The position numbers were made by a program, and so were the translations under genes. This document shows positions 7,905-57,239 of a stretch of 64,000 nucleotides of DNA, in pieces. The notes beneath the pieces were generated by a model. The model did no database searches. It was not told the DNA's origin and worked only from the letters and a program-made list of their open reading frames with translations. Location: the IMG/VR virus record IMGVR_UViG_3300023174_002543, positions 186,001-250,000 of that record. One strand, 5' to 3'. The stretch's first letter is position 1; each line of letters starts with the position of its first letter.

Positions 7905-8798
7905 TTAGCAGTTGTACACGCCTGGATCCATAACTATAGTACCATTACCGTCTGAATTATACCAACTACCTCCGCCAGCACCAGCACCACTGTATGGGCT
8001 ATCCGAACTACGTGATAATCCTATGAAGGTTAACTGGTGTCCTACTGCACTGTTATCTTCTGCTAATGTAGGATTTCCATACCCAAGTGATTGAATCAAT
8101 GCGATACAATTTGAAACAGCAGGTAATGGTGCAGTTGGAACTGTAATTGTACTTGATGTTGGATTATATACATACGAATTTGAAACTATGCGAATATCTG
8201 TTTGATAACCTACAAAAGGTAAACCATCTTGCGGATTTGGCCAACCATTACCAATAGTCAATGAATTAGATTCATACACTATATTGTCTGTTTGCGTACC
8301 ACCGCAACGAACTCCGTTAACCCAAACGGCCTCTACATTACTATTGGCAGCATTTCTACTTACTGCAATATGATACCAAACATTTTTTACAAAATTTGTA
8401 CTAGGTACATATATATTTTGACCAACAAAATATCCATCTACTCTTATGTTTGAATTATTAACTGTTTGACTACCGTCCCAATAATTATCATTAACATATA
8501 TTCCTAGATAGTGCGGTTGTCTTGTGGTATCGCTTGGACTACCTATAAAAGTACCTACGCATCTACTAGCACTATTATCCCATTTAACCCATCCCTCTAC
8601 TGTAAATGAACGGGTAGTAGTTGGTCTTGCTTTACCAGTTATGAGATTATAAGGTCCGGTATAATCTGTGTTATTTACGATAGCGTCATTTGGAGTAGAA
8701 CCGGATCCACCTCCACCTCCGCCTGTGCCGGCTCCGAATGTGATCCCTTTGCCTATTGTTAGGCCTGCGTGTAATGTTAATGTTAATGGTGCAACCAT
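7905..8798 (-). CDS. LamG/concanavalin-A-like lectin domain protein, probably virion-associated
   Basis: FTVEGWVKW, WYHIAVSR and FVGYQTDIRI motifs; Gly linker. Confidence 0.75.
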   Translation of the reverse strand: MVAPLTLTLHAGLTIGKGITFGAGTGGGGGGSGSTPNDAIVNNTDYTGPYNLITGKARPTTTRSFTVEGWVKWDNSASRCVGTFIGSPSDTTRQPHYLGIYVNDNYWDGSQTVNNSNIRVDGYFVGQNIYVPSTNFVKNVWYHIAVSRNAANSNVEAVWVNGVRCGGTQTDNIVYESNSLTIGNGWPNPQDGLPFVGYQTDIRIVSNSYVYNPTSSTITVPTAPLPAVSNCIALIQSLGYGNPTLAEDNSAVGHQLTFIGLSRSSDSPYSGAGAGGGSWYNSDGNGTIVMDPGVYNC

Positions 8799-10126: not shown

Positions 10127-10681
10127 TTAGATAGTCAAATCTCTTTTACCCACATATGGATTATAGATTTTTTCTAATTGTTGTATAGTGTGACCAGTAC
10201 TTTCATCACTATGTTTAACTGCAATGCCACCTGCACTAGCCCAAGCACTCAAGTACTTTCCGAAGTCATCTACTAATACTTGTGGTTTACCGTTTTTAGT
10301 AGCATATTTATATTTTGCACTTGTAAAGATAGCATTACTGCTAGTACCCGGATTGTAAGTGTCTAACCATTCACGCTTACCTTTGATGCTTGCTTGCCCC
10401 TCCATTCTAAGAGGAGCACTTAATACAGTAAAAGGTATTTTGTTTCTATGTAACCAAGCAATGATTACCTGTCCACCAGGTAATGGATCTAAGTCTCTAA
10501 AAAAATGATATACATTTTCGGGACCTGATTTTGCCAATCTAACGATTGCTTCCTCAGGGTTTGTGATATCTTTATAATGTTTAACTTTTTCTATCTCAGC
10601 CCAACGACCAAAGAAGTCGGCTTGAACTCCATCCATATCAAGGTATAAATGGGGCATTGATTCGATTTCTTGGATTTTCAT
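10127..10681 (-). CDS. HAD-family 5'(3')-deoxyribonucleotidase
   Basis: LYLDMDGVQADF, LSAP, K..WL and LVDD motifs. Confidence 0.85.
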   Translation of the reverse strand: MKIQEIESMPHLYLDMDGVQADFFGRWAEIEKVKHYKDITNPEEAIVRLAKSGPENVYHFFRDLDPLPGGQVIIAWLHRNKIPFTVLSAPLRMEGQASIKGKREWLDTYNPGTSSNAIFTSAKYKYATKNGKPQVLVDDFGKYLSAWASAGGIAVKHSDESTGHTIQQLEKIYNPYVGKRDLTI

Positions 10682-16396: not shown

Positions 16397-17245
16397 TTAA
16401 ATGTCCAAATATTTTAACTGAAAACTATCAGCATGTTCATCGTGGCCCTTATATCCTCTTGGATTGCACACAATACGTGTGTTACCAATCATATAATCAA
16501 ATGGTTCATGCGTATGACCATGAGTCCACAATGCAATTTGTGGGTGATTCAAAATGAATTCACTCAACTCACTATGGTATCCACCATTCATCAACATATC
16601 ACCTTTGTATCTATCATGGATTGATTGGTGACTTGGTGTATGGTGACCTACAATAACACACTTCTGGTCTTTTCTATCGGCTAGAACATTTTTAAAGTAA
16701 CTCATTGTTTGCGAATGGCGATACATTGTTTGTGCCGGTCGTAACTTAGTGAAACCTTTTTCATCATTGCGAATAATGCGATAGTCATTCATCATGTCCG
16801 TTAGTGCATGAAGTGTTAGTGGATCACCTTTATTACAATCAGTCCACAATGTAGCACCAATGAATGTTACATCATTGATAACTTTCAAATCGTTTTCTAA
16901 AAAGTAAACGTTGGGAAACTTAGCACATTCTTCTCGCAAATGGTCCAAACTAGCCTTCCAACGACCATGATAGAATTCGTGATTACCTGCAATGTAAATC
17001 ACATGTGGGAATTGAAAACTACAGCGGCTAAGGAAGTCACGGAAGCGCAACGCTACGACCTGTCTACGACCAAGGTCAGCAAGATTAATGTTACTATACA
17101 TTCCATAACTCATTTCCGGATGATTATGTAAATCTTCCGCAATCATAATATCACCGCCGAGGATAAGTACCTCCGCACCTTCTTCGTTTTTAAGGTTGAT
17201 ATCTTCAAATTCTAAATGTAGGTCACTACATACTGCTATTTTCAT
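16397..17245 (-). CDS. Calcineurin-like metallophosphoesterase
   Basis: SDLH, GGD, AGNHE, GHH.P, HGHTH and NPRGY motifs. Confidence 0.92.
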   Translation of the reverse strand: MKIAVCSDLHLEFEDINLKNEEGAEVLILGGDIMIAEDLHNHPEMSYGMYSNINLADLGRRQVVALRFRDFLSRCSFQFPHVIYIAGNHEFYHGRWKASLDHLREECAKFPNVYFLENDLKVINDVTFIGATLWTDCNKGDPLTLHALTDMMNDYRIIRNDEKGFTKLRPAQTMYRHSQTMSYFKNVLADRKDQKCVIVGHHTPSHQSIHDRYKGDMLMNGGYHSELSEFILNHPQIALWTHGHTHEPFDYMIGNTRIVCNPRGYKGHDEHADSFQLKYLDI

Positions 17246-17592
17246 TTTAATCCTTCAACGTGTTTGCACTTGCCCCTAAATACAAATCCAGGGCATGAAC
17301 ATGTATGTCCATTTTCTTCTTCAGTAACAGTATATTCGTTGCCTTTACTACCTTTAACTATCCATGACTTTGATACTTGTTTAAGTTCGTCAATATGGAT
17401 ATAACCATATGTATTTGGGATTTCTTTGAAAGTACGACCGCGTGTGTCAATACGAATAAAATTCTTTAATGTACGAACCTCTTTCGAACCATGCGGTACA
17501 TAAGCATACAATTTAGTTTTGTCATCACTCAAGTAATAAGCATGGTTGGGACAATCAACATCCCATTTAGTAGTTTCTTGAAATAACTTCAT
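17242..17592 (-). CDS. SWIM zinc-finger protein
   Basis: C-terminal CSCPGF...CKH. Confidence 0.75.
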   Translation of the reverse strand: MKLFQETTKWDVDCPNHAYYLSDDKTKLYAYVPHGSKEVRTLKNFIRIDTRGRTFKEIPNTYGYIHIDELKQVSKSWIVKGSKGNEYTVTEEENGHTCSCPGFVFRGKCKHVEGLK

Positions 17593-17659
17593 AACATCTC
17601 CCTTTGATATCTTATTATAGTACCAAAAGGAGATATTGTCAACATCTTACTTGTTGTTT

Positions 17660-20822: not shown

Positions 20823-21518
20823 ATGATTTTTGGCTTTGATATAATTAGTGATTTAAACCTAACAGAGAATGATATCTTTGATTGGGAAGGAAAGCCAACA
20901 AGTCTTTATTGTGTGCTTGCAGGTAACATATCTAGCGACCTGCACGTACTCTATAAAACTATCAAACATTTGAGTAAGTTATATCAAGGTGTTTTTTATA
21001 TAGATGGTTTTATAGAAAATAGCCAAATAGAAGATAAAGACCGCGTTATAGATGAAATATCAAAAATATTCACTGGTATGAAAAATGCAGTATATCTACA
21101 TAACAATGTAGTTGTAGTAGAGGGAGTAGCATTAGTAGGAGTGAATGGGTGGTACGGAAATCAAGCCACTACACAAGGAGACACACTCAATCTAAGAATG
21201 AATAGGTATGATGATTTGGCATACCTGCAAAAAACAATAGAGAAATTGCAACTTCATATAGATGTAAAACAAATCGTAATAATTTCTAATAGTATACCTT
21301 CTATTGAATTGTATTTTGGTGAGAAACCTAATATAGATCCAGCTGAGATAAATCTAAATTATGTGTTAGATACTGATACTGAGAGTAAAATAACTACTTG
21401 GGTATTCGGAACACATAAAAAAATAGTTGACACCAAAATTAACGGTGTCAACTATTTTAATAACCCTTGTCTTACTAAGATTCCTTATTACCCTAAAAGA
21501 ATCAATATAGAAGTTTAA
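20823..21518 (+). CDS. Degenerate metallophosphoesterase-fold protein
   Basis: Motif order is preserved but the ligands are altered (SDLN, AGNI, GFIE, FGTH). Confidence 0.65.
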   Translation: MIFGFDIISDLNLTENDIFDWEGKPTSLYCVLAGNISSDLHVLYKTIKHLSKLYQGVFYIDGFIENSQIEDKDRVIDEISKIFTGMKNAVYLHNNVVVVEGVALVGVNGWYGNQATTQGDTLNLRMNRYDDLAYLQKTIEKLQLHIDVKQIVIISNSIPSIELYFGEKPNIDPAEINLNYVLDTDTESKITTWVFGTHKKIVDTKINGVNYFNNPCLTKIPYYPKRINIEV

Positions 21519-21826
21519 ACTTCGCTTTCAATTTTGACTTGTAAGGGGAAACCTTCTTGTCTTGCATCAAGTGTAACTTCAATTCCCTTTTGTTCTGCAA
21601 TCTCGTATGGCAATACTGCAACTACAGCACTTCCTTGTTCATGTATACCTACTGTGATATTTTGTGCGGTATCACTGGTATAATTAAAGTGATCCACTAA
21701 ACTACGTACTACAAAATCCATAGAAGTTAGTTCATCATTTAAATAGATAACCTTGAACATAGGGGGTTCTTGGATAGCTAGATTAGGCTTGATTTTAATT
21801 TTTGTATCTATATGTGTTGATGCCAT
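21515..21826 (-). CDS. clpS: ClpS N-degron adaptor
   Basis: PP.FKVI.LND..T.MDFVV...IH.QG.AVV...YEIAE.K...FPL. Confidence 0.93.
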   Translation of the reverse strand: MASTHIDTKIKIKPNLAIQEPPMFKVIYLNDELTSMDFVVRSLVDHFNYTSDTAQNITVGIHEQGSAVVAVLPYEIAEQKGIEVTLDARQEGFPLQVKIESEV

Positions 21827-21893
21827 TTTAAACCCTTAAAGTTAGTAGTGCATATTTCTATACACTACTTTTATTTACAATAAATGTATTATA

Positions 21894-22340
21894 CTATTTA
21901 GTGTAGTTTATTGCAATACTCTTGGGTTTTTTGTCTTCCGGGACTAAACGTTCGCATGTAATAGTCAAAATACCGTTATTATGCTCGGCATTTTTAACTT
22001 CCATGTGTTCTCCTAAGATAAATTCACGTTGGAAGTTTCTATAACTAATACCACGGTGTAGATATTCTTTTGGTTTATCCAAATCCTGAATTTTGTTACC
22101 AGTGACAGTAAGCATACGATTTTCTATCTCAATAGAAATTTCCCCTTGAGTAAATCCTGCAACTGCAATTTCAATTGCAAAATTGTCCTCAGAGATTTGT
22201 ACCACATTGTACGGTGGGTAATTATTATTTGTTTGTGTTGCATTCATACGCATCAATTCGTCTAACATAGAATCAAATCCTATGCCAAATCTATGAATTG
22301 CAGGTATGTCTAATGAACGTAATGATAATGTGTTTGTCAT
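21894..22340 (-). CDS. Small heat-shock protein (Hsp20/IbpA-like)
   Basis: IGFD, NYPPYNV, AVAGF, YLHRGI..R.F and NGIL motifs; start moved to the ATG after AGGAG. Confidence 0.95.
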   Translation of the reverse strand: MTNTLSLRSLDIPAIHRFGIGFDSMLDELMRMNATQTNNNYPPYNVVQISEDNFAIEIAVAGFTQGEISIEIENRMLTVTGNKIQDLDKPKEYLHRGISYRNFQREFILGEHMEVKNAEHNNGILTITCERLVPEDKKPKSIAINYTK

Positions 22341-22346
22341 GTTTTT

Positions 22347-22394
22347 CTCCTTATTAAGCAAGTATATGACAAGCGGGCCTCGAAAGCGCCCGCT
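22347..22394 (-). promoter_or_regulatory. ROSE-like RNA thermometer in the hsp20 leader
   Basis: CUUGCU pairs with AGGAG leaving a bulged G; upstream GC-rich hairpin closed by a UUCG loop. Confidence 0.65.
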
Positions 22395-22408
22395 ATCTTT
22401 ATAGAATC

Positions 22409-24340
22409 TTATTTAGATTCTTTTACCTCTGCATCAACCACTGTTGACTCATCAACGGGTTTTGCAGTTTCTTCTGTAGTAGCAGTTGGATTTGCTGCCT
22501 CTTCAGCCTTCTTCTTGGCTTCTTCTTCCTCATACTTAAACTTAGTAATTGGACCGATAGCCTCGTATAACTTAGGAATACTATCTTGGATTGCTTTAGG
22601 ATCATCACCTTCCATAGCAGTTTCAACAGCCTTAATAGCTTCGTCTGCTTTGTTGCGTTCTTCTTCGGTGACCTTATCCTTATAAGCCTCAAAGTCTTTC
22701 TTAAAGCCAAACAATGTACCTTCAGCACTATTACGTGCTTGTACTAATTCAACATGTTTCTTATCGGCTTCAGCATTCAACTCACCATCTTTAACCATTT
22801 GTTGAATTTCTGCTTCACTTAATCCTGAATTAGCCTTGATAGTGATTTTGTTCTCTTTACCAGTACCTTTGTCCTTAGCGGACACTTTGAGAATACCGTT
22901 AGCATCAATATCTAATGTAACTTCAATCTGTGGTTGACCACGTGGTGCTGGTGGAATGTCACCCAAACTAAACTCACCCAATACTTTATTATATTGGAAT
23001 AGTTCACGTTCACCTTGACCTACTTTAATAGTAACTGCCGGCTGATTGTCATCCGCAGTACTAAAAGTTTGTGAATGTTTAGTTGGGATAGTTGTATTCT
23101 TGTTAATCAATTTAGTGAATACACCACCGACTGTTTCGATACCAAGACTCAATGGAGTAACGTCAAGTAATAGAACGTCACTACGGCCACCACTCAATAC
23201 ATCACCCTGAATAGCAGCACCTGCGGCAACTGCTTCGTCTGGGTTAACATCTTTGCGTGGTGCCTTGCCGAATAATGATTCAACAACTTCTTGCACCTTA
23301 GGCATACGTGTCATACCGCCAACTAAGATAACTTCATCAATGTCACCTGCACTAACATTAGCATCTTGCATAGCCTGACGACATGGAGCCAAACTACGTT
23401 GGATTAACTCGTCAACCAATTGTTCTAATTTAGAACGTGATAGTTTAACGTTCATGTGCTTAGGACCATTTGCATCGGCTGTAATATATGGCAAGTTAAC
23501 ATCTGTTTGTGCTGAACTTGATAATTCAATCTTAGCCTTTTCTGCGGCTTCTTTTAGTCGTTGTAGTGCCAACACATCTTTACTTAAATCAACTCCGTTG
23601 TCTTTCTTAAACTCATCAATTAAGAAATCCATAATACGTTGGTCAAAGTCTTCACCACCTAAGAATGTATCACCGTTCGTAGACAATACTTCGATTTGTT
23701 TGTCACCGTCAACATCTGCTAATTCAATGATAGATACGTCAAATGTACCACCACCTAAGTCATAGACTGCAATTTTACGGTCACGTTTTTCTTGTTTATC
23801 AACACCATATGCTAGTGCGGCCGCTGTTGGCTCGTTAATAATACGCAATACTTCTAAGCCTGCAATTTTACCTGCATCCTTAGTTGCTTGACGTTGACTA
23901 TCGTTAAAGTAAGCAGGAACTGTAATAACTGCTTGGGTTACATCATGTCCAAGATAGTCTTCGGCAGTCTTTTTCATCTTGCGTAGTACTTCGGCACTAA
24001 TTTGCGGGGGTGCTAACTTTTCATCATTAACTTGTACCCATGCATCACCGTTATCGTTCTGTACGATTTTGTATGGCATTAGGTCAATATCTTTTTGCAC
24101 AGCCTGTTCATTAAACTTACGTCCAATTAAACGTTTGCTTGCATAGATTGTGTTCTTTGGATTTGTAACTGCTTGGCGTTTGGCGCTTGCACCAACCAAG
24201 ATTTCATCGTTTGCGTAGGCAACGATTGAGGGTGTAGTTCTAGCACCTTCTGAATTTTCAATTACTTTGGGGATTCCGTTTTCGATAACGGCTACGCATG
24301 AATTTGTGGTACCCAAATCGATACCGATGACTTTGCTCAT
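22409..24340 (-). CDS. dnaK: Hsp70 chaperone DnaK
   Basis: Full length; [25 protein letters not shown] and [13 protein letters not shown] motifs. Confidence 0.98.
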
Positions 24341-24345
24341 TTTTT

Positions 24346-24406
24346 TCTCCTTTAAAAAGCAAGATGTTTATATAGACCTGACTATCAGCGTCCATATGTA
24401 TTTATA
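24346..24406 (-). promoter_or_regulatory. dnaK leader: TATAAATA late promoter plus a ROSE-like SD hairpin
   Basis: TATAAATA at 24399-24406; hairpin at 24375-24392; UCUUGCUU...AAGGAGA. Confidence 0.6.
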
Positions 24407-24446
24407 TATTTTACATTGTTGCGTAAAATATTTGTATATTATTGGG

Positions 24447-24665
24447 TTAATATTGTTTAGGGGGAAGTGTTTGGTCACGCAAATACTTTTTCCAACGACT
24501 CTTTGCTTTACTCTTATCTATCTTACGCTTAGTAGTGGGTTTTACAAATTCTTGTCTATCACGGATTTCTTGGATTAATCCTGACTCTAAGATTTTTTTT
24601 TTGAATTTACGTAATGCTTTTTCAACATTTCCGTCTGGTCCTACTATTACTTTTCTTCCTGGCAT
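24447..24665 (-). CDS. rpsU: Ribosomal protein bS21
   Basis: VEKALRKFKKK...G...E.R.RQ.FVKPT..RK. Confidence 0.9.
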   Translation of the reverse strand: MPGRKVIVGPDGNVEKALRKFKKKILESGLIQEIRDRQEFVKPTTKRKIDKSKAKSRWKKYLRDQTLPPKQY

Positions 24666-25855
24666 ATGATTGGTGTTGGTTTAATAATCTGCTCCCTACT
24701 TATATTTATCTTTTTAACATTAAACTTACGATATTCACGTGTCCGATACATATGGCACATTAATGCTTTTTCAATTTCAGTGTGCAAGCCCCTAGCACCG
24801 GTCTTTAGTGCTAGTGTATTTTCTGCTAATTGATCCAATGCATCTTCTGTAAAGGTCAAATCAATTTCATCTAATTTAAGCAAATATTGATATTGACTGA
24901 TATAGTTGTTTTTCACATCTGTAAGAATATGTATTAATTGTTCTTTAGTGAGGTTTTTTACACTAATAGTGGTTGTAAAACGACCTACAAATTCCGGAAT
25001 TAATCCAAACTTAGTCAAGTCATCAGGGGTGACTTCTGACAAATCACCTTCTATTTTACTATCTTTAATGTCTGCGGCAAATCCAATACTAGTACCATTG
25101 GTGCGTTTTGCTATAATTTCTTTTAATCCTACAAATGCACCACCTGCAATGAATAATATATTTTTAGTATCAATCTCAACCATGTCTGAACCAGGGTGTT
25201 TACGTCCACCTTGATTAGGTACACGACAAACTGTACCCTCAACTAACTTAAGCAATGCTTGCTGTACGCCCTCACCTGACACATCACGGGTAATGCTAGT
25301 ACTTTCACTTTTACGGGCAATTTTGTCAATTTCATCAATGAATACGATACCCTTTTCAGCTAAAGATTTGTCTCCTCCAGCCGCGTTAAGCAACATACTA
25401 ATCATTGATTCAACATCATCACCTACATATCCGGCTTCGGTTAAACTAGTAGCATCGGCAACAACAAACGGAACCTTTAAATACTTGGCGGCAGTTTTAG
25501 CCAATAGTGTTTTACCACTACCAGTTGGACCAACTAACAATACATTGCCTTTTTGAATTTCTAAGTCTTTGGGAGGACGACTAATACGCTTATAATGATT
25601 AGTGATTGCGACACTTAACACTATTTTAGCACTATCTTGACCCACAATATGTTGGTCCAAATATTCTTTAATACTTTCAGGATCATATTGGGGTTCTTCT
25701 TGTGGACCTGAGGTTTCATCAACTATTAATTCTTGGCAAAGTTCAACACAATCGCTACAGATTGCTACACTTTCACCTACGATTAATTTTTTGACTGTTT
25801 CTTTACTAGTACCACAAAAACTACAATGAGTGAGTTGTTTATTTTCTTCTGTCAT
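24647..25855 (-). CDS. clpX: ClpX ATPase
   Basis: CSFC/CSDC zinc domain, [29 protein letters not shown] loop, GARGL. Confidence 0.97.
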
Positions 25856-55833: not shown

Positions 55834-56559
55834 TCTAACTCCGTAATTTCTTCTACTATTGGATCCGGTTCACCTTCTTCACTAAACCCATATGTAACTT
55901 CATATTCTCTACCTATATAATGAAATGTTTCAGTAAAGGTTCTTTGGTTGTTACTAGAATCTGTTGGACCAATCAATGCTAAAACTAATAGCATGTGTTC
56001 ACGTTCAGTCCCCAGTAAAGTTCTGCGTTTTTTCATGCCTATACTTTTTAAAAATTCAAGTGCTTCCTCTTGATTTCTGAAGGGTGAACGATTCATCTTT
56101 TTAATATCTCAATTATCTTTTCTTGTTCTTTTAGTTTGAGCCATTCTTCTTCTGGTGCAAATGTACTACATTTTCTTAATGATTCATCAATCAACCATTT
56201 AAGTTCGTATAGTTCTTGTTTAACACCCCAAGACACAAATCCATCATTACGTGGATTTGTGCATTCATAACGCATGGCCCATATGCCATGTTTAATAGCA
56301 TTTAAGTCCCAGTCTTTACGAAAGCCCATTATTCAACTCCCATACGGTCTTTAATGTAATCACTTATCCTACTAGAATGACTACGAATTTCTTTATCATT
56401 GAGAGATTGTATATTATTGTTAAAGGTTAATGCATGTTTGGCACATTCCTGAACAATCAACTCGGCGAACTTAGACATAAAGGCAGTTTGTTCTTCCCAA
56501 CTATCGCCAAAGTTTGATTTGGCCGCCTCAGACCAAAGTTGTTTAACTCGTTCGTTCAC
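55830..56559 (-). CDS. Three small hypothetical proteins (55830-56096, 56093-56329, 56329-56559)
   Basis: Coupled ORFs. Confidence 0.55.
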
Positions 56560-57239
56560 TTACAACCTTGTCGGGCAATTTGATAGAATTCAGCACGTGC
56601 AGCTGAATCAGTTTTGAACCCGCCACCTAATCGTGTAGTTACTGTTGAACTACCTGTATCCTCAACACCACGTGACTTTACACAATAATGTTGGGCGTCA
56701 ATCATAACTGCGACATCCTCTGTCTCTAAGATGAACTGTAAGGTGTGAAATACTTGTTCAGTTAGCCGTTCCTGTATTTGTGGACGCTTGCTGAAATATT
56801 CTACAATCCTGTTAATCTTACTAAGCCCTAAGACTTTATCTTTAGGGACATAAGCTACTGTCGCTAATCCATCTATGACCACAAAGTGATGTTCACAGTT
56901 AGATTGAACACTTACGTTACGCTCACATACCATTTCGTTGTACTTCATCTTATTATCGACTGTTGTACATTTTGGAAATGCCTCGTAATCTAAACCCCAG
57001 AAAATCTCATTCACATACATCTTAGCTACTCGCTTTGGTGTATCAATCAGACTATCATCAGTTAGGTCTAAACCTAATACTTCCATGATGCCTTGAAAAT
57101 GACTTTCAATTAACTCAATCTTACCCTTACGATCCATATGACCTGTATAAGTAGTTGGTGTTTCAACTCCCATCTTAACTAGATGTTCGTGTACTTTTAA
57201 TCCTAATTCAGGATCCGTTTTTGTTTTATTATAACTCAT
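56556..57239 (-). CDS. folE: GTP cyclohydrolase I
   Basis: TPKRVAKM, SNCEHH, GLSK..R, RPQIQERLT and H.C...RGV motifs. Confidence 0.96.
   Translation of the reverse strand: MSYNKTKTDPELGLKVHEHLVKMGVETPTTYTGHMDRKGKIELIESHFQGIMEVLGLDLTDDSLIDTPKRVAKMYVNEIFWGLDYEAFPKCTTVDNKMKYNEMVCERNVSVQSNCEHHFVVIDGLATVAYVPKDKVLGLSKINRIVEYFSKRPQIQERLTEQVFHTLQFILETEDVAVMIDAQHYCVKSRGVEDTGSSTVTTRLGGGFKTDSAARAEFYQIARQGCK

What the first reader, a model, noticed from the sequence alone, without database searches (positions are those of the whole stretch)
22341..24406. ROSE-like RNA thermometers in front of both phage hsp20 and phage dnaK
SEEN: the hsp20 leader reads CUUGCU-UAAUA-AGGAG and the dnaK leader reads UCUUGCU-UUUUAA-AGGAGA. 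Each can pair the SD with a bulged G, and each has a second hairpin upstream (22372-22394 with a UUCG loop; 24375-24392). KNOWN: U(U/C)GCU opposite the SD defines ROSE thermometers, typically found on small heat-shock genes. INFERENCE: temperature-gated translation of phage chaperones. A ROSE on dnaK under a TATAAATA late promoter would be unusual.
Basis: partly seen in the sequence, partly recalled or inferred. Interest (0 to 1): 0.65.

Follow-up and report, generated by a model that had tools for sequence, protein, structure and literature searches.

The report
ROSE-type leaders on phage chaperone genes
The neighbouring dnaK and hsp20 genes of a 367-kb freshwater phage each start with the same small two-hairpin RNA leader, a relative of the bacterial 'ROSE' RNA thermometers; it probably ties chaperone synthesis to temperature or protein stress, and it proves common on phage hsp20 genes and, unexpectedly, on phage dnaK.

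Summary
On the minus strand, dnaK (22409-24340) and hsp20 (21894-22340) each have a leader made of a G+C-rich hairpin I with a bulged G. A short hairpin II follows, in which (U)CUUGCU pairs with the AGGAG ribosome-binding site around a second bulged G.

- **Family match.** Rfam ROSE_3 scores the window's hsp20 leader below threshold (21 bits). Leaders of relatives reach 53.7 bits on hsp20 (cut-off 43) and 34 bits on dnaK.
- **Own model.** A covariance model built only from relatives' hsp20 leaders finds two strong hits in the whole genome: the dnaK leader (55.7 bits) and the hsp20 leader (50.9 bits). In 80 viral dnaK-hsp20 loci it hits 138 times, always at those two gene starts.
- **Structure support.** Hairpin I covaries strongly. 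Hairpin II is nearly invariant.
- **Distribution.** The 80 closest bacterial dnaK loci lack the element. Cultured Kyanoviridae have it on hsp20.
- **Function.** Thermometer action is inferred, not shown. Hairpin II is about 4-5 kcal/mol weaker than the ROSE_3 consensus, and folding models do not mark these start sites as unusually closed.
- **Rival.** Control by the IbpA-like Hsp20 protein remains open.
- **Promoter.** The TATAAATA motif is a real promoter-like element of unresolved class.

The parts
24399..24406 (-). TATAAATA promoter-like motif, 2 nt 5' of dnaK hairpin I
   Evidence: Sequence. ATAAATA is about 8-fold enriched in intergenic DNA, and 68 of 129 copies lie less than 100 nt upstream of a same-strand start. 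An ATAAATA-type motif sits at the same place in most relatives' dnaK leaders. Its class, T4-type late or sigma-70 -10, is unresolved.
24371..24396 (-). dnaK leader hairpin I: 7 bp, bulged G at 24389, 4 bp, loop UAG
   Evidence: R1 alignment. The pairs are kept through many compensatory changes in 59 distinct dnaK leaders. It also appears in the RNAfold minimum-energy structure at all temperatures tried.
24346..24364 (-). dnaK leader hairpin II: UCUUGCU (24358-24364) paired with AGGAGA (24346-24351), bulged G at 24360, loop UUUA
   Evidence: Sequence and R1 alignment. It is the minimum-energy structure at 5-25 C and is lost at 30 C and above when folded from the likely 5' end. The pairs are invariant in 59 distinct dnaK leaders. 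Computed dG is -3.6, -2.2 and -0.6 kcal/mol at 15, 25 and 37 C.
24335..24399 (-). Whole ROSE_3-like element of dnaK, as matched by model R1
   Evidence: 55.7 bits, E=1.8e-14, filters off, with a model built only from hsp20 leaders of other contigs.
22409..24340 (-). dnaK (Hsp70), 643 aa
   Evidence: Pfam HSP70 6.5e-257. The closest bacterial homologues are Comamonadaceae and other Burkholderiales, at about 66-77% identity over full or near-full-length matches.
22396..22403 (-). TATAAAGA, a degenerate copy of the promoter-like motif in the dnaK-hsp20 spacer, directly 5' of hairpin I
   Evidence: Sequence. Relatives have NATAAATA, TATAAT or TTGACA-17-TATTAT at this place. It is weak in the window, so co-transcription with dnaK is possible.
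22372..22394 (-). hsp20 leader hairpin I: 7 bp, bulged G at 22387, 2 bp, UUCG loop
   Evidence: Rfam ROSE_3 alignment and R1 alignment. Compensatory changes occur in 8 of 11 pairs of the seed. It is not called terminator-like because no T run follows it.
22365..22371 (-). UUGUCAU, complementary to AUGACAA (22334-22340), the start codon plus 4 nt
   Evidence: RNAfold minimum-energy helix at 5-42 C. Complementarity of 5 nt or more between this spacer and the start region occurs in 57% of hsp20 leaders against 15% after shuffling. The partners change together: GUCAU with AUGAC, UUGAUU with AAUCAA, UUGUU with AACAA.
22347..22362 (-). hsp20 leader hairpin II: CUUGCU (22357-22362) paired with AGGAG (22347-22351), bulged G at 22359
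   Evidence: Sequence and ROSE_3 and R1 alignments. The core pairs are invariant in 51 distinct hsp20 leaders. Computed dG is -2.1, -0.8 and +0.7 kcal/mol at 15, 25 and 37 C.
22335..22397 (-). Whole ROSE_3-like element of hsp20
   Evidence: R1 gives 50.9 bits, E=5e-13. Rfam ROSE_3 gives 21.1 bits, E=0.38, full length, with the start codon aligned.
21894..22340 (-). hsp20, an IbpA-like small heat-shock protein of 148 aa
   Evidence: Pfam HSP20 3.9e-18. Alignment with Salmonella IbpA and IbpB shows that the equivalents of IbpA Y34, R93 and R97 are kept and that K98 is replaced by E.

Best explanation
Both leaders are copies of one cis-acting RNA element, a phage-borne relative of the ROSE_3 class of RNA thermometers.

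Proposed working:
- Each mRNA starts at or near a stable 5' hairpin I. By inference this hairpin aids folding and protects the 5' end.
- Hairpin II follows. In it the conserved anti-SD (U)CUUGCU pairs imperfectly, around a bulged G and a U-G pair, with the strong AAGGAG ribosome-binding site.
- In the hsp20 leader a further helix covers the start codon.
- At low temperature the site is partly closed. Warming melts the weak hairpin II and lets 30S subunits bind.
- The phage's own DnaK and IbpA-like Hsp20 are therefore translated in step with temperature. No host factor such as sigma-32 is needed, because the sensor lies in the mRNA.

Hairpin II is much weaker than in Pseudomonas and the phage lives in lakes, so the set point should lie well below the 25-42 C range of the bacterial elements.

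Shown here: the sequence, the family relationship, the covariation of hairpin I, and the exclusive link to the two chaperone genes. Inferred: the melting, the transcription start, and the effect on translation.

The leader was most likely copied from hsp20 onto an acquired dnaK, because phage hsp20 genes without a dnaK neighbour carry it and bacterial dnaK genes do not.
For: - Rfam ROSE_3 matches the hsp20 leader over its full length with the start codon in register, at 21.1 bits.
- Leaders of relatives score 53.7 bits (above the cut-off of 43), 42.6 and 38.7 on hsp20. They score 34.3 (E=0.0024) and 27.7 on dnaK.
- Model R1 was built from 31 hsp20 leaders of other contigs. It gives 55.7 bits for the dnaK leader and 50.9 for the hsp20 leader. 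Nothing else in the genome exceeds 15.2 bits.
- R1 gives 138 hits in 80 viral loci: 74 at dnaK starts, 64 at hsp20 starts and none elsewhere.
- Covariation: 95.9% of cells are paired against 79.6% after shuffling and 40-62% when the partners are slid. Ten of 11 hairpin-I pairs show double changes.
- Hairpin II is kept in 110 distinct rows. Its only variations are U-G to C-G and bulge G to A.
- Both UUGCU and UCGCU forms occur in phage hsp20 leaders.
- Folded from the likely 5' end, the dnaK leader has the ROSE hairpin as its minimum-energy structure up to 25 C. The SD unpaired probability rises from 0.21 at 5 C to 0.84 at 37 C.
- Hairpin I shares the GAUGCC...GGGUC bulged-G design of the ROSE_3 consensus.
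- The experimentally proven model is the Pseudomonas ibpA leader: two hairpins, with hairpin II alone sufficient (PMC3669281).
Against: - No experiment or RNA data exist. No RNA run holds this DNA.
- Hairpin II is only 6-7 bp and A-U rich, without the upper G-C clamp that mattered in P. putida. Its dG at 37 C is -0.6 (dnaK) and +0.7 (hsp20) kcal/mol, against -4.7 to -6.2 for the ROSE_3 consensus.
- With other sequence boundaries RNAfold leaves the dnaK SD open at all temperatures. In that fold the anti-SD pairs with codons 1-3 instead.
- The energy to open -15..+6 is no higher than for 197 other genes of the genome. Medians at 15 C are 7.7 (dnaK leaders) and 6.3 (hsp20 leaders) against 8.2 kcal/mol.
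- Hairpin II shows conservation but no compensatory change, so its pairing is not proven by covariation.
- The window's own leaders do not reach the Rfam gathering score.
Confidence: 0.6

Rival explanations
1. The shared leader is mainly an operator for a protein, most plausibly the phage's own IbpA-like Hsp20. Free Hsp20 would bind both leaders and repress translation. When Hsp20 is drawn onto aggregating proteins, both hsp20 and dnaK would be released. The sensor would then read protein damage rather than temperature, or both together.
For: - E. coli, Cedecea and Vibrio IbpA bind their own ROSE-type 5' UTR and repress translation. R93 and an aromatic residue at position 34 are essential for this (PMC10474464). 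IbpA also controls sigma-32 translation (PMC10410725).
- All phage Hsp20s aligned keep the R93 and Y34 equivalents, which IbpB lacks at R93.
- Two different genes carry the same leader.
- In one sub-lineage the bulged G is A in hairpin I and hairpin II of both genes at once, while the stems differ. This fits a shared reader of that nucleotide.
- The weak hairpin II may need a protein to close it.
Against: - The K98 equivalent, needed as a positive charge in E. coli IbpA, is E, T or S in the phage proteins.
- No binding data exist.
- The G-to-A lineage may represent only one or a few evolutionary events.
- In Pseudomonas, hairpin II alone works as a thermometer in vitro without any protein (PMC3669281).
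Confidence: 0.2
2. The element does not switch. Hairpin I is a 5' stabiliser, and the conserved stretch before the SD is part of an efficient, constitutive initiation region or an RNase or processing site. The resemblance to ROSE is ancestry without retained thermosensing.
For: - Hairpin II is predicted to be marginal.
- Accessibility of the initiation region is ordinary for this genome.
- The strongest covariation is in hairpin I, not in the sensor hairpin.
Against: - The anti-SD is invariant in 110 distinct leaders, although it has no coding role and neighbouring spacer letters vary freely.
- The only changes seen keep the pairing (U-G to C-G) or keep a purine at the bulge.
- Model R1 matches only dnaK and hsp20 starts: 138 of 138 hits in the 80 viral loci and no other strong hit in the genome. 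In the motif scan, most gene-start matches preceded by hairpin I were hsp20, with 3 dnaK and two small unknown proteins.
- The genome's two J-domain genes do not have it.
Confidence: 0.12
3. Chance complementarity next to strong ribosome-binding sites, with hairpin I of hsp20 being merely the dnaK terminator.
For: - The window's Rfam hit alone has E=0.38.
- Hairpin I of hsp20 follows the dnaK stop codon by about 14 nt.
Against: - The motif is unique to the two leaders among gene starts of the genome.
- R1 scores are 50-56 bits, and the element is conserved and covaries in over 100 leaders.
- In relatives where hsp20 is not behind dnaK, the same hairpin I follows a promoter-like motif.
- There is no T run and no terminator call.
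Confidence: 0.02

Closest known systems
ROSE_3 (Rfam RF02523): short two-hairpin ROSE-like thermometer of Pseudomonas ibpA (PMC3669281)
   Same: - About 60-nt leader with a G+C-rich hairpin I carrying a bulged G in a GAUGCC...GGGUC design.
- Single-stranded spacer, then hairpin II with U(U/C)GCU opposite the SD and a bulged G.
- Sits on an IbpA-type sHsp gene.
- Relatives' leaders reach the family's gathering score.
   Different: - Encoded by phages, and also present on dnaK.
- The promoter is not of the sigma-32 type.
- Hairpin II lacks the upper G-C clamp and is about 4-5 kcal/mol weaker.
- The hsp20 version adds a helix over the start codon, whereas the AUG is unpaired in Pseudomonas.
- The window's own copies score 21 bits or are not found by the Rfam model.
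Classical ROSE elements of Bradyrhizobium and other rhizobia and the E. coli/Salmonella ibpA leader (3-4 hairpins)
   Same: - U(U/C)GCU anti-SD and a bulged G.
- Heat-shock gene targets.
- In the classical elements the start codon is also paired, as in the phage hsp20 leader. This point rests on my own knowledge of ROSE1.
   Different: - Two hairpins here, three in one phage sub-lineage.
- Much shorter sensor hairpin.
- No Rfam hit to the longer ROSE families in the window.
IbpA self-repression through its own 5' UTR (PMC10474464, PMC10410725)
   Same: An IbpA-like sHsp with the R93 and Y34 equivalents lies behind a ROSE-type leader. A second heat-shock gene shares the control element: rpoH in E. 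coli, dnaK here.
   Different: Not tested for the phage protein. The K98 equivalent is not basic.
Known phage RNA thermometers: lambda cIII, SPbeta blyA (fourU), gut-phage sigma-70 (fourU) (PMC11182007, PMC10586365)
   Same: Temperature-responsive mRNA structures encoded by phages.
   Different: They belong to other structural classes and control other genes. The 2024 paper counts these three as the phage cases known. None is ROSE-like and none controls a chaperone.

Membership tests
ROSE-like RNA thermometer (ROSE_3 type) | Lies in the 5' leader of a heat-shock gene, ending at the start codon | tested here: met
   Both elements end at the ATG of hsp20 and dnaK. All 138 hits in the viral loci lie at these two starts.
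ROSE-like RNA thermometer (ROSE_3 type) | U(U/C)GCU anti-SD opposite the Shine-Dalgarno sequence in the 3'-proximal hairpin | tested here: met
   CUUGCU and UCUUGCU lie opposite AGGAG. UCGCU variants occur in relatives. The pairs are invariant in 110 distinct rows.
ROSE-like RNA thermometer (ROSE_3 type) | Bulged G and non-canonical pairs in the SD hairpin | tested here: met
   By the pairing scheme, G22359 and G24360 are unpaired next to a U-G pair. The bulge is G in 99 and A in 11 of the distinct leaders. The three-dimensional geometry was not tested.
ROSE-like RNA thermometer (ROSE_3 type) | Two to four hairpins, with a stable 5' hairpin supported by covariation | tested here: met
   Hairpin I: 10 of 11 pairs show changes on both sides, and 94% of cells are paired.
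ROSE-like RNA thermometer (ROSE_3 type) | Reaches the Rfam gathering score of 43 bits | tested here: not met
   The window's hsp20 leader scores 21.1 bits and the dnaK leader is not reported. The score is met by a relative's hsp20 leader (L015, 53.7 bits) and nearly met by L014 (42.6). The best dnaK leader reaches 34.3 bits. The window's copies are linked to those by model R1.
ROSE-like RNA thermometer (ROSE_3 type) | Temperature-dependent melting of the SD hairpin and heat-induced translation | not testable with these tools
   Only in-silico hints exist and they disagree. One search shows opening between 5 and 37 C for dnaK. Searches show no special occlusion.
T4-type late promoter (TATAAATA read by a gp55-like sigma) | The motif is over-represented just upstream of genes | tested here: met
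   47% of 131 ATAAATA copies lie in the 5.7% intergenic DNA, against 15-20% for shifted A/T-rich controls. 68 of 129 lie less than 100 nt before a same-strand start.
T4-type late promoter (TATAAATA read by a gp55-like sigma) | No -35 element; precedes late (structural) genes; a gp55-like factor is encoded | tested here: inconclusive
   - Several relatives have TTGACA 17 nt upstream of TATAAA/TATAAT.
- Genes behind the motif in the window include a deoxyribonucleotidase and a GTP cyclohydrolase, and the others have no PHROG match.
- gp55 was not searched for.
- The simple sigma-70 scan finds no promoter before either gene.
Self-regulating IbpA-type sHsp | Arg93, an aromatic residue at position 34, and basic residues at 97 and 98 (E. 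coli IbpA numbering) | tested here: inconclusive
   The R93, Y34 and R97 equivalents are present. The K98 equivalent is E in the window's protein and E, T or S in relatives. RNA binding was not testable.

The most novel reading that the evidence does not exclude
The two leaders form a small phage-encoded chaperone regulon with a dual sensor. The ROSE-type hairpins would act as a low-temperature-range thermometer. They would also be the operator for the phage's IbpA-like Hsp20, which would read the bulged purine present in both hairpins of both mRNAs. That reading would explain why G becomes A in all four hairpins together in one lineage. The phage would then gauge protein aggregation in the infected cell and adjust its own DnaK and Hsp20 supply independently of the host heat-shock sigma factor.
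Probability: 0.15. Interest if true: 0.8.

Novelty: new variant of a known kind. Interest (0 to 1): 0.6.

Why it matters
RNA thermometers are barely documented in phages. A 2024 survey counts three, none ROSE-like (PMC11182007).

This element is widespread. It occurs on hsp20 of cultured Kyanoviridae: Methylophilales phage Melnitz, Synechococcus phage Bellamy, cyanophage P-TIM40, and more weakly Pelagibacter phage HTVC008M. It also occurs on dozens of uncultured viral contigs.

In large freshwater phages the same leader has been placed on a phage dnaK. I did not find that on bacterial dnaK genes or in the literature.

A sensor built into the mRNA needs no host sigma factor. That would suit phages whose hosts range from cyanobacteria to SAR11 and Betaproteobacteria.

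It also offers natural, very short and apparently low-set-point ROSE variants for study and for engineering. And it gives a concrete handle on why phages carry hsp20 and dnaK at all, because the conditions under which they are translated can now be tested.

Tried and rejected
- **Whole-genome ROSE_3 search** (genome search). Its first-look filter missed the known 21-bit hit, so I used cmscan and my own model instead.
- **RNAalifold on all 78 hsp20 leaders** (MAFFT alignment A1). It returned no structure, because distant groups are shifted by one column around the bulge. I re-aligned a coherent subset (A3) and gave the structure myself.
- **SD occlusion ranking.** I expected RNAfold to rank the two leaders among the most SD-occluded of the genome. 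It does not: dnaK ranks 198 and hsp20 ranks 78 of 199. Searches also gave no excess. Results depend strongly on the 5' boundary (compare).
- **Raw TATAAATA count.** 34 copies against roughly 76 expected from base composition first suggested no promoter role. The positional test overturned that.
- **PHROG scan of genes behind NATAAATA**. It did not settle early versus late.
- **Host-side origin.** R1 on five Limnohabitans, Polynucleobacter, Rhodoferax and Methylophilaceae genomes gave only unrelated weak hits. ROSE_3 in 121 genomes of the same order gave nothing, but the tool's own control also failed to ring, so this says nothing about absence. The six IbpA-like genes found in those 121 genomes have no ROSE hit upstream.
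- **Terminator reading of hsp20 hairpin I.** Rejected.
- **Two small proteins with the same leader** in other contigs have no Pfam match.
Full report
**What is there**

All genes of the region lie on the minus strand:
- clpX (24647-25855)
- a ribosomal protein S21 gene (24447-24665)
- dnaK (22409-24340)
- hsp20 (21894-22340; the true start is the ATG at 22340)
- clpS (21515-21826)

The window is part of a single 367,104-bp virus record that CheckV rates complete. Near-identical DNA occurs in freshwater and lake metagenomes from two studies, and no RNA run holds it. The phage DnaK is closest to those of Comamonadaceae and other Burkholderiales, at about 66-77% identity over full or near-full-length matches. 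The host is therefore probably a freshwater betaproteobacterium, which is an inference.

**The observation**

The hsp20 leader has these parts:
- Hairpin I at 22372-22394: a 7-bp stem, bulged G, 2 bp and a UUCG loop.
- A short spacer.
- CUUGCU (22357-22362), which can pair with AGGAG (22347-22351) as C-G, U-A, U-G, bulged G, C-G, U-A.

The dnaK leader has these parts:
- TATAAATA at 24399-24406.
- Hairpin I at 24371-24396, also with a bulged G.
- UCUUGCU (24358-24364) opposite AGGAGA (24346-24351).

Genome-wide, CTTGCT followed within 3-9 nt by AGGAG occurs three times. Two are these leaders. The third is inside a coding region on the other strand, with no gene behind it.

**Family membership**

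Rfam's ROSE_3 model aligns the hsp20 leader end to end, with both hairpins and the start codon in register. The score is only 21.1 bits against a cut-off of 43, with E=0.38.

Relatives settle the matter. The hsp20 protein retrieved 80 viral loci and the DnaK protein another 80.
- ROSE_3 scores their hsp20 leaders up to 53.7 bits, with others at 42.6 and 38.7.
- It also scores two dnaK leaders, at 34.3 bits (E=0.0024) and 27.7 bits.

I then built a covariance model, R1, from 31 hsp20 leaders of other contigs. It used neither the window nor any dnaK leader.
- With filters off, R1 finds two strong matches in the 64-kb window. They are the dnaK leader (55.7 bits, E=1.8e-14) and the hsp20 leader (50.9 bits, E=5e-13). 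The next match has 14.7 bits.
- The whole genome gives the same two.
- Over 80 viral dnaK loci (382 kb) R1 gives 138 matches: 74 at dnaK starts, 64 at hsp20 starts and none elsewhere.

So the two leaders are one RNA family, and that family is a relative of ROSE_3.

**Structure support**

- Hairpin I covaries strongly. On the model-based alignment of 110 distinct rows, 95.9% of cells pair, against 79.6% after shuffling and 40-62% when partners are slid. Ten of 11 pairs show changes on both sides. The dnaK subset alone shows the same.
- The seed alignment made by MAFFT, which was not fitted to the structure, gives 97.7% paired and 8 of 11 pairs with double changes.
- Hairpin II is almost invariant. 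This is expected, because its 3' arm is the ribosome-binding site. The only variation keeps pairing (U-G to C-G) or swaps the bulged G for A. The SD pairing therefore rests on conservation and on homology, not on covariation.

The hsp20 leader has a further feature. UUGUCAU (22365-22371) is complementary to AUGACAA, the start codon plus four bases. RNAfold makes this helix at all temperatures tried. Such complementarity occurs in 57% of hsp20 leaders against 15% after shuffling, and the partners change together in different lineages.

In dnaK leaders the anti-SD is also complementary to codons 1-3 (UUGCUU with GAGCAA). This holds in 89% of leaders against 35% after shuffling. It offers an alternative closed form.

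**Distribution**

- Bacterial dnaK: none of the 80 closest loci has the element.
- Candidate-host genomes: five gave only unrelated weak hits.
- IbpA-like genes: only 6 of 121 genomes of the same order have one, at about 40% identity, and none has a ROSE hit upstream.
- Motif scan: an unbiased scan of the viral collection for the anti-SD plus SD motif returned 81 matches. Of these, 43 precede genes that my strict test calls hsp20, about 11 more are evidently hsp20, 3 are dnaK, and two precede small unknown proteins behind a hairpin I. The rest have no gene or no hairpin I.
- Cultured Kyanoviridae carry it on hsp20. R1 scores are Methylophilales phage Melnitz 54.7 bits (ROSE_3 34.1), Synechococcus phage Bellamy 33.4, phage C48C1 31.2, cyanophage P-TIM40 30.1 and Pelagibacter phage HTVC008M 16.7.
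- Within this genome only dnaK and hsp20 have it. The genome's two J-domain genes do not, and no grpE was found.

The simplest history is that a leader native to phage hsp20 genes was copied onto a dnaK taken from a host. This is an inference.

**Mechanism and its weak points**

In Pseudomonas the two-hairpin ibpA leader is a proven thermometer. Hairpin II melts between 25 and 42 C and suffices alone, while hairpin I stays closed and supports folding (PMC3669281). By homology I propose the same here.

The energetics are only partly friendly.

| Hairpin II | dG at 15 C | dG at 25 C | dG at 37 C |
|---|---|---|---|
| dnaK leader (window) | -3.6 | -2.2 | -0.6 |
| hsp20 leader (window) | -2.1 | -0.8 | +0.7 |
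| ROSE_3 consensus hairpin | not quoted | not quoted | -4.7 to -6.2 |

Values are in kcal/mol.

- Folded from the likely 5' end, the dnaK leader shows the ROSE hairpin as its minimum-energy structure up to 25 C. The SD unpaired probability rises from 0.21 at 5 C to 0.84 at 37 C.
- With other boundaries the anti-SD pairs with the first codons instead, and the SD is predicted open.
- Neither leader stands out from 197 other genes of the genome in opening energy or in SD occlusion.
- Nearest-neighbour rules do not model the non-canonical pairs known from ROSE structures (summarised in PMC11182007), so these numbers are soft.

If the element is a thermometer, its range should be far lower than in Pseudomonas, which would suit a lake.

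**A rival worth testing**

Gammaproteobacterial IbpA binds its own ROSE-type leader and represses translation. This needs R93 and an aromatic residue at position 34, and it also reaches rpoH (PMC10474464, PMC10410725).
- The phage Hsp20 is IbpA-like and keeps the R93, Y34 and R97 equivalents. K98 is replaced by an acidic or neutral residue.
- In one sub-lineage the bulged G is A in hairpins I and II of both genes at once, although the stems themselves differ.
- That pattern suggests one common constraint on the bulged purine, either a shared set point or a shared reader.

**Promoter**

- ATAAATA is a genuine promoter-like motif of this genome. It sits just 5' of hairpin I in most dnaK leaders, so the mRNA should begin at the foot of hairpin I.
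- Melnitz and HTVC008M have TATAAATA at the same place. Bellamy and many contigs have an extended -10 of the sigma-70 type.
- Some dnaK relatives add a TTGACA at 17 nt.
- Whether the window's motif is read as a late promoter is open.

**Novelty**

The RNA class is known. I found three things described nowhere in the searched literature:
- its wide presence in phages;
- its placement on a dnaK gene;
- the paired use on two adjacent chaperone genes.

A 2024 paper lists three phage thermometers, none of them ROSE-like.

**Verdict**

The family assignment is well supported. The function is inferred. The element is a new variant of a known kind, of moderate to good interest, and is directly testable in cultured phages.

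Noticed in passing
window 21515-25855 (-): A proteostasis and translation island: clpX, ribosomal protein S21, dnaK, hsp20 and clpS lie in a row. Elsewhere the genome has two J-domain proteins (G000 about 274757 and 158723, minus strand) and no detectable grpE.
   Followed up: partly
L087, L092, L105, L134, L139, L140, L147; partly L117 and L143 (dnaK and hsp20 leaders): In one sub-lineage the bulged G is an A in hairpin I and hairpin II of both leaders at once (CUUACU or CUCACU; GGGAU-A-CC). These leaders also carry a third small hairpin (GGGCAUAGUGCCC) between I and II. Forty other distinct loci have G at all four places. The number of independent events was not determined.
   Followed up: partly
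window 24338-24364 (-) and 64 dnaK leaders: The dnaK anti-SD UUGCUU is also complementary to GAGCAA, the last base of the start codon plus codons 2-3. In the CUCACU lineage the register shifts to GCUCA with UGAGC. Complementarity of 5 nt or more is seen in 89% of leaders against 35% after shuffling. This is a possible alternative closed conformation.
   Followed up: partly
window about 17593-17640 (-), before gene 17242-17592; also G000 about 305891 (-): Very long, near-perfect hairpins bury the ribosome-binding site (predicted about -26 kcal/mol at 25 C). Their loop or upper stem holds a promoter-like TATAAT or GATAAATA motif. This resembles the T4 arrangement in which a late promoter inside the hairpin frees the site; that comparison is from my own knowledge.
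   Followed up: no
whole genome G000; window examples at 24399-24406, and upstream of 7905-8798, 10127-10681 and 56556-57239: NATAAATA is the dominant promoter-like motif. 47% of ATAAATA copies lie in the 5.7% intergenic DNA. Some copies are only 5-13 nt before the start codon, which implies very short leaders.
   Followed up: partly
L259:2531-2861 (-) and L314:4140-4404 (+): Two small proteins (90 aa and 65 aa) without a Pfam match carry the same hairpin I plus CUUGCUU-AAGGAGA leader. ROSE_3 scores 27.1 bits on L259. They may be further members of the regulon in other phages.
   Followed up: partly
L314:12888-13275 (+): A permuted alphaproteobacterial-type tmRNA gene (118 bits) lies on the same 'viral' contig. 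The contig may therefore be a prophage or partly bacterial.
   Followed up: no
L020-L077 (hsp20 leaders of more distant viral contigs): In a second large group the leader reads UUCGCUU or CUCGCUG opposite AGGAGG or AGGAGA. Hairpin I there carries AUCGCC...GGGGUC, so the 5' arm of hairpin I mirrors the anti-SD variant of hairpin II within each group. These leaders follow extended -10 promoters of the TGnTATAAT type.
   Followed up: no
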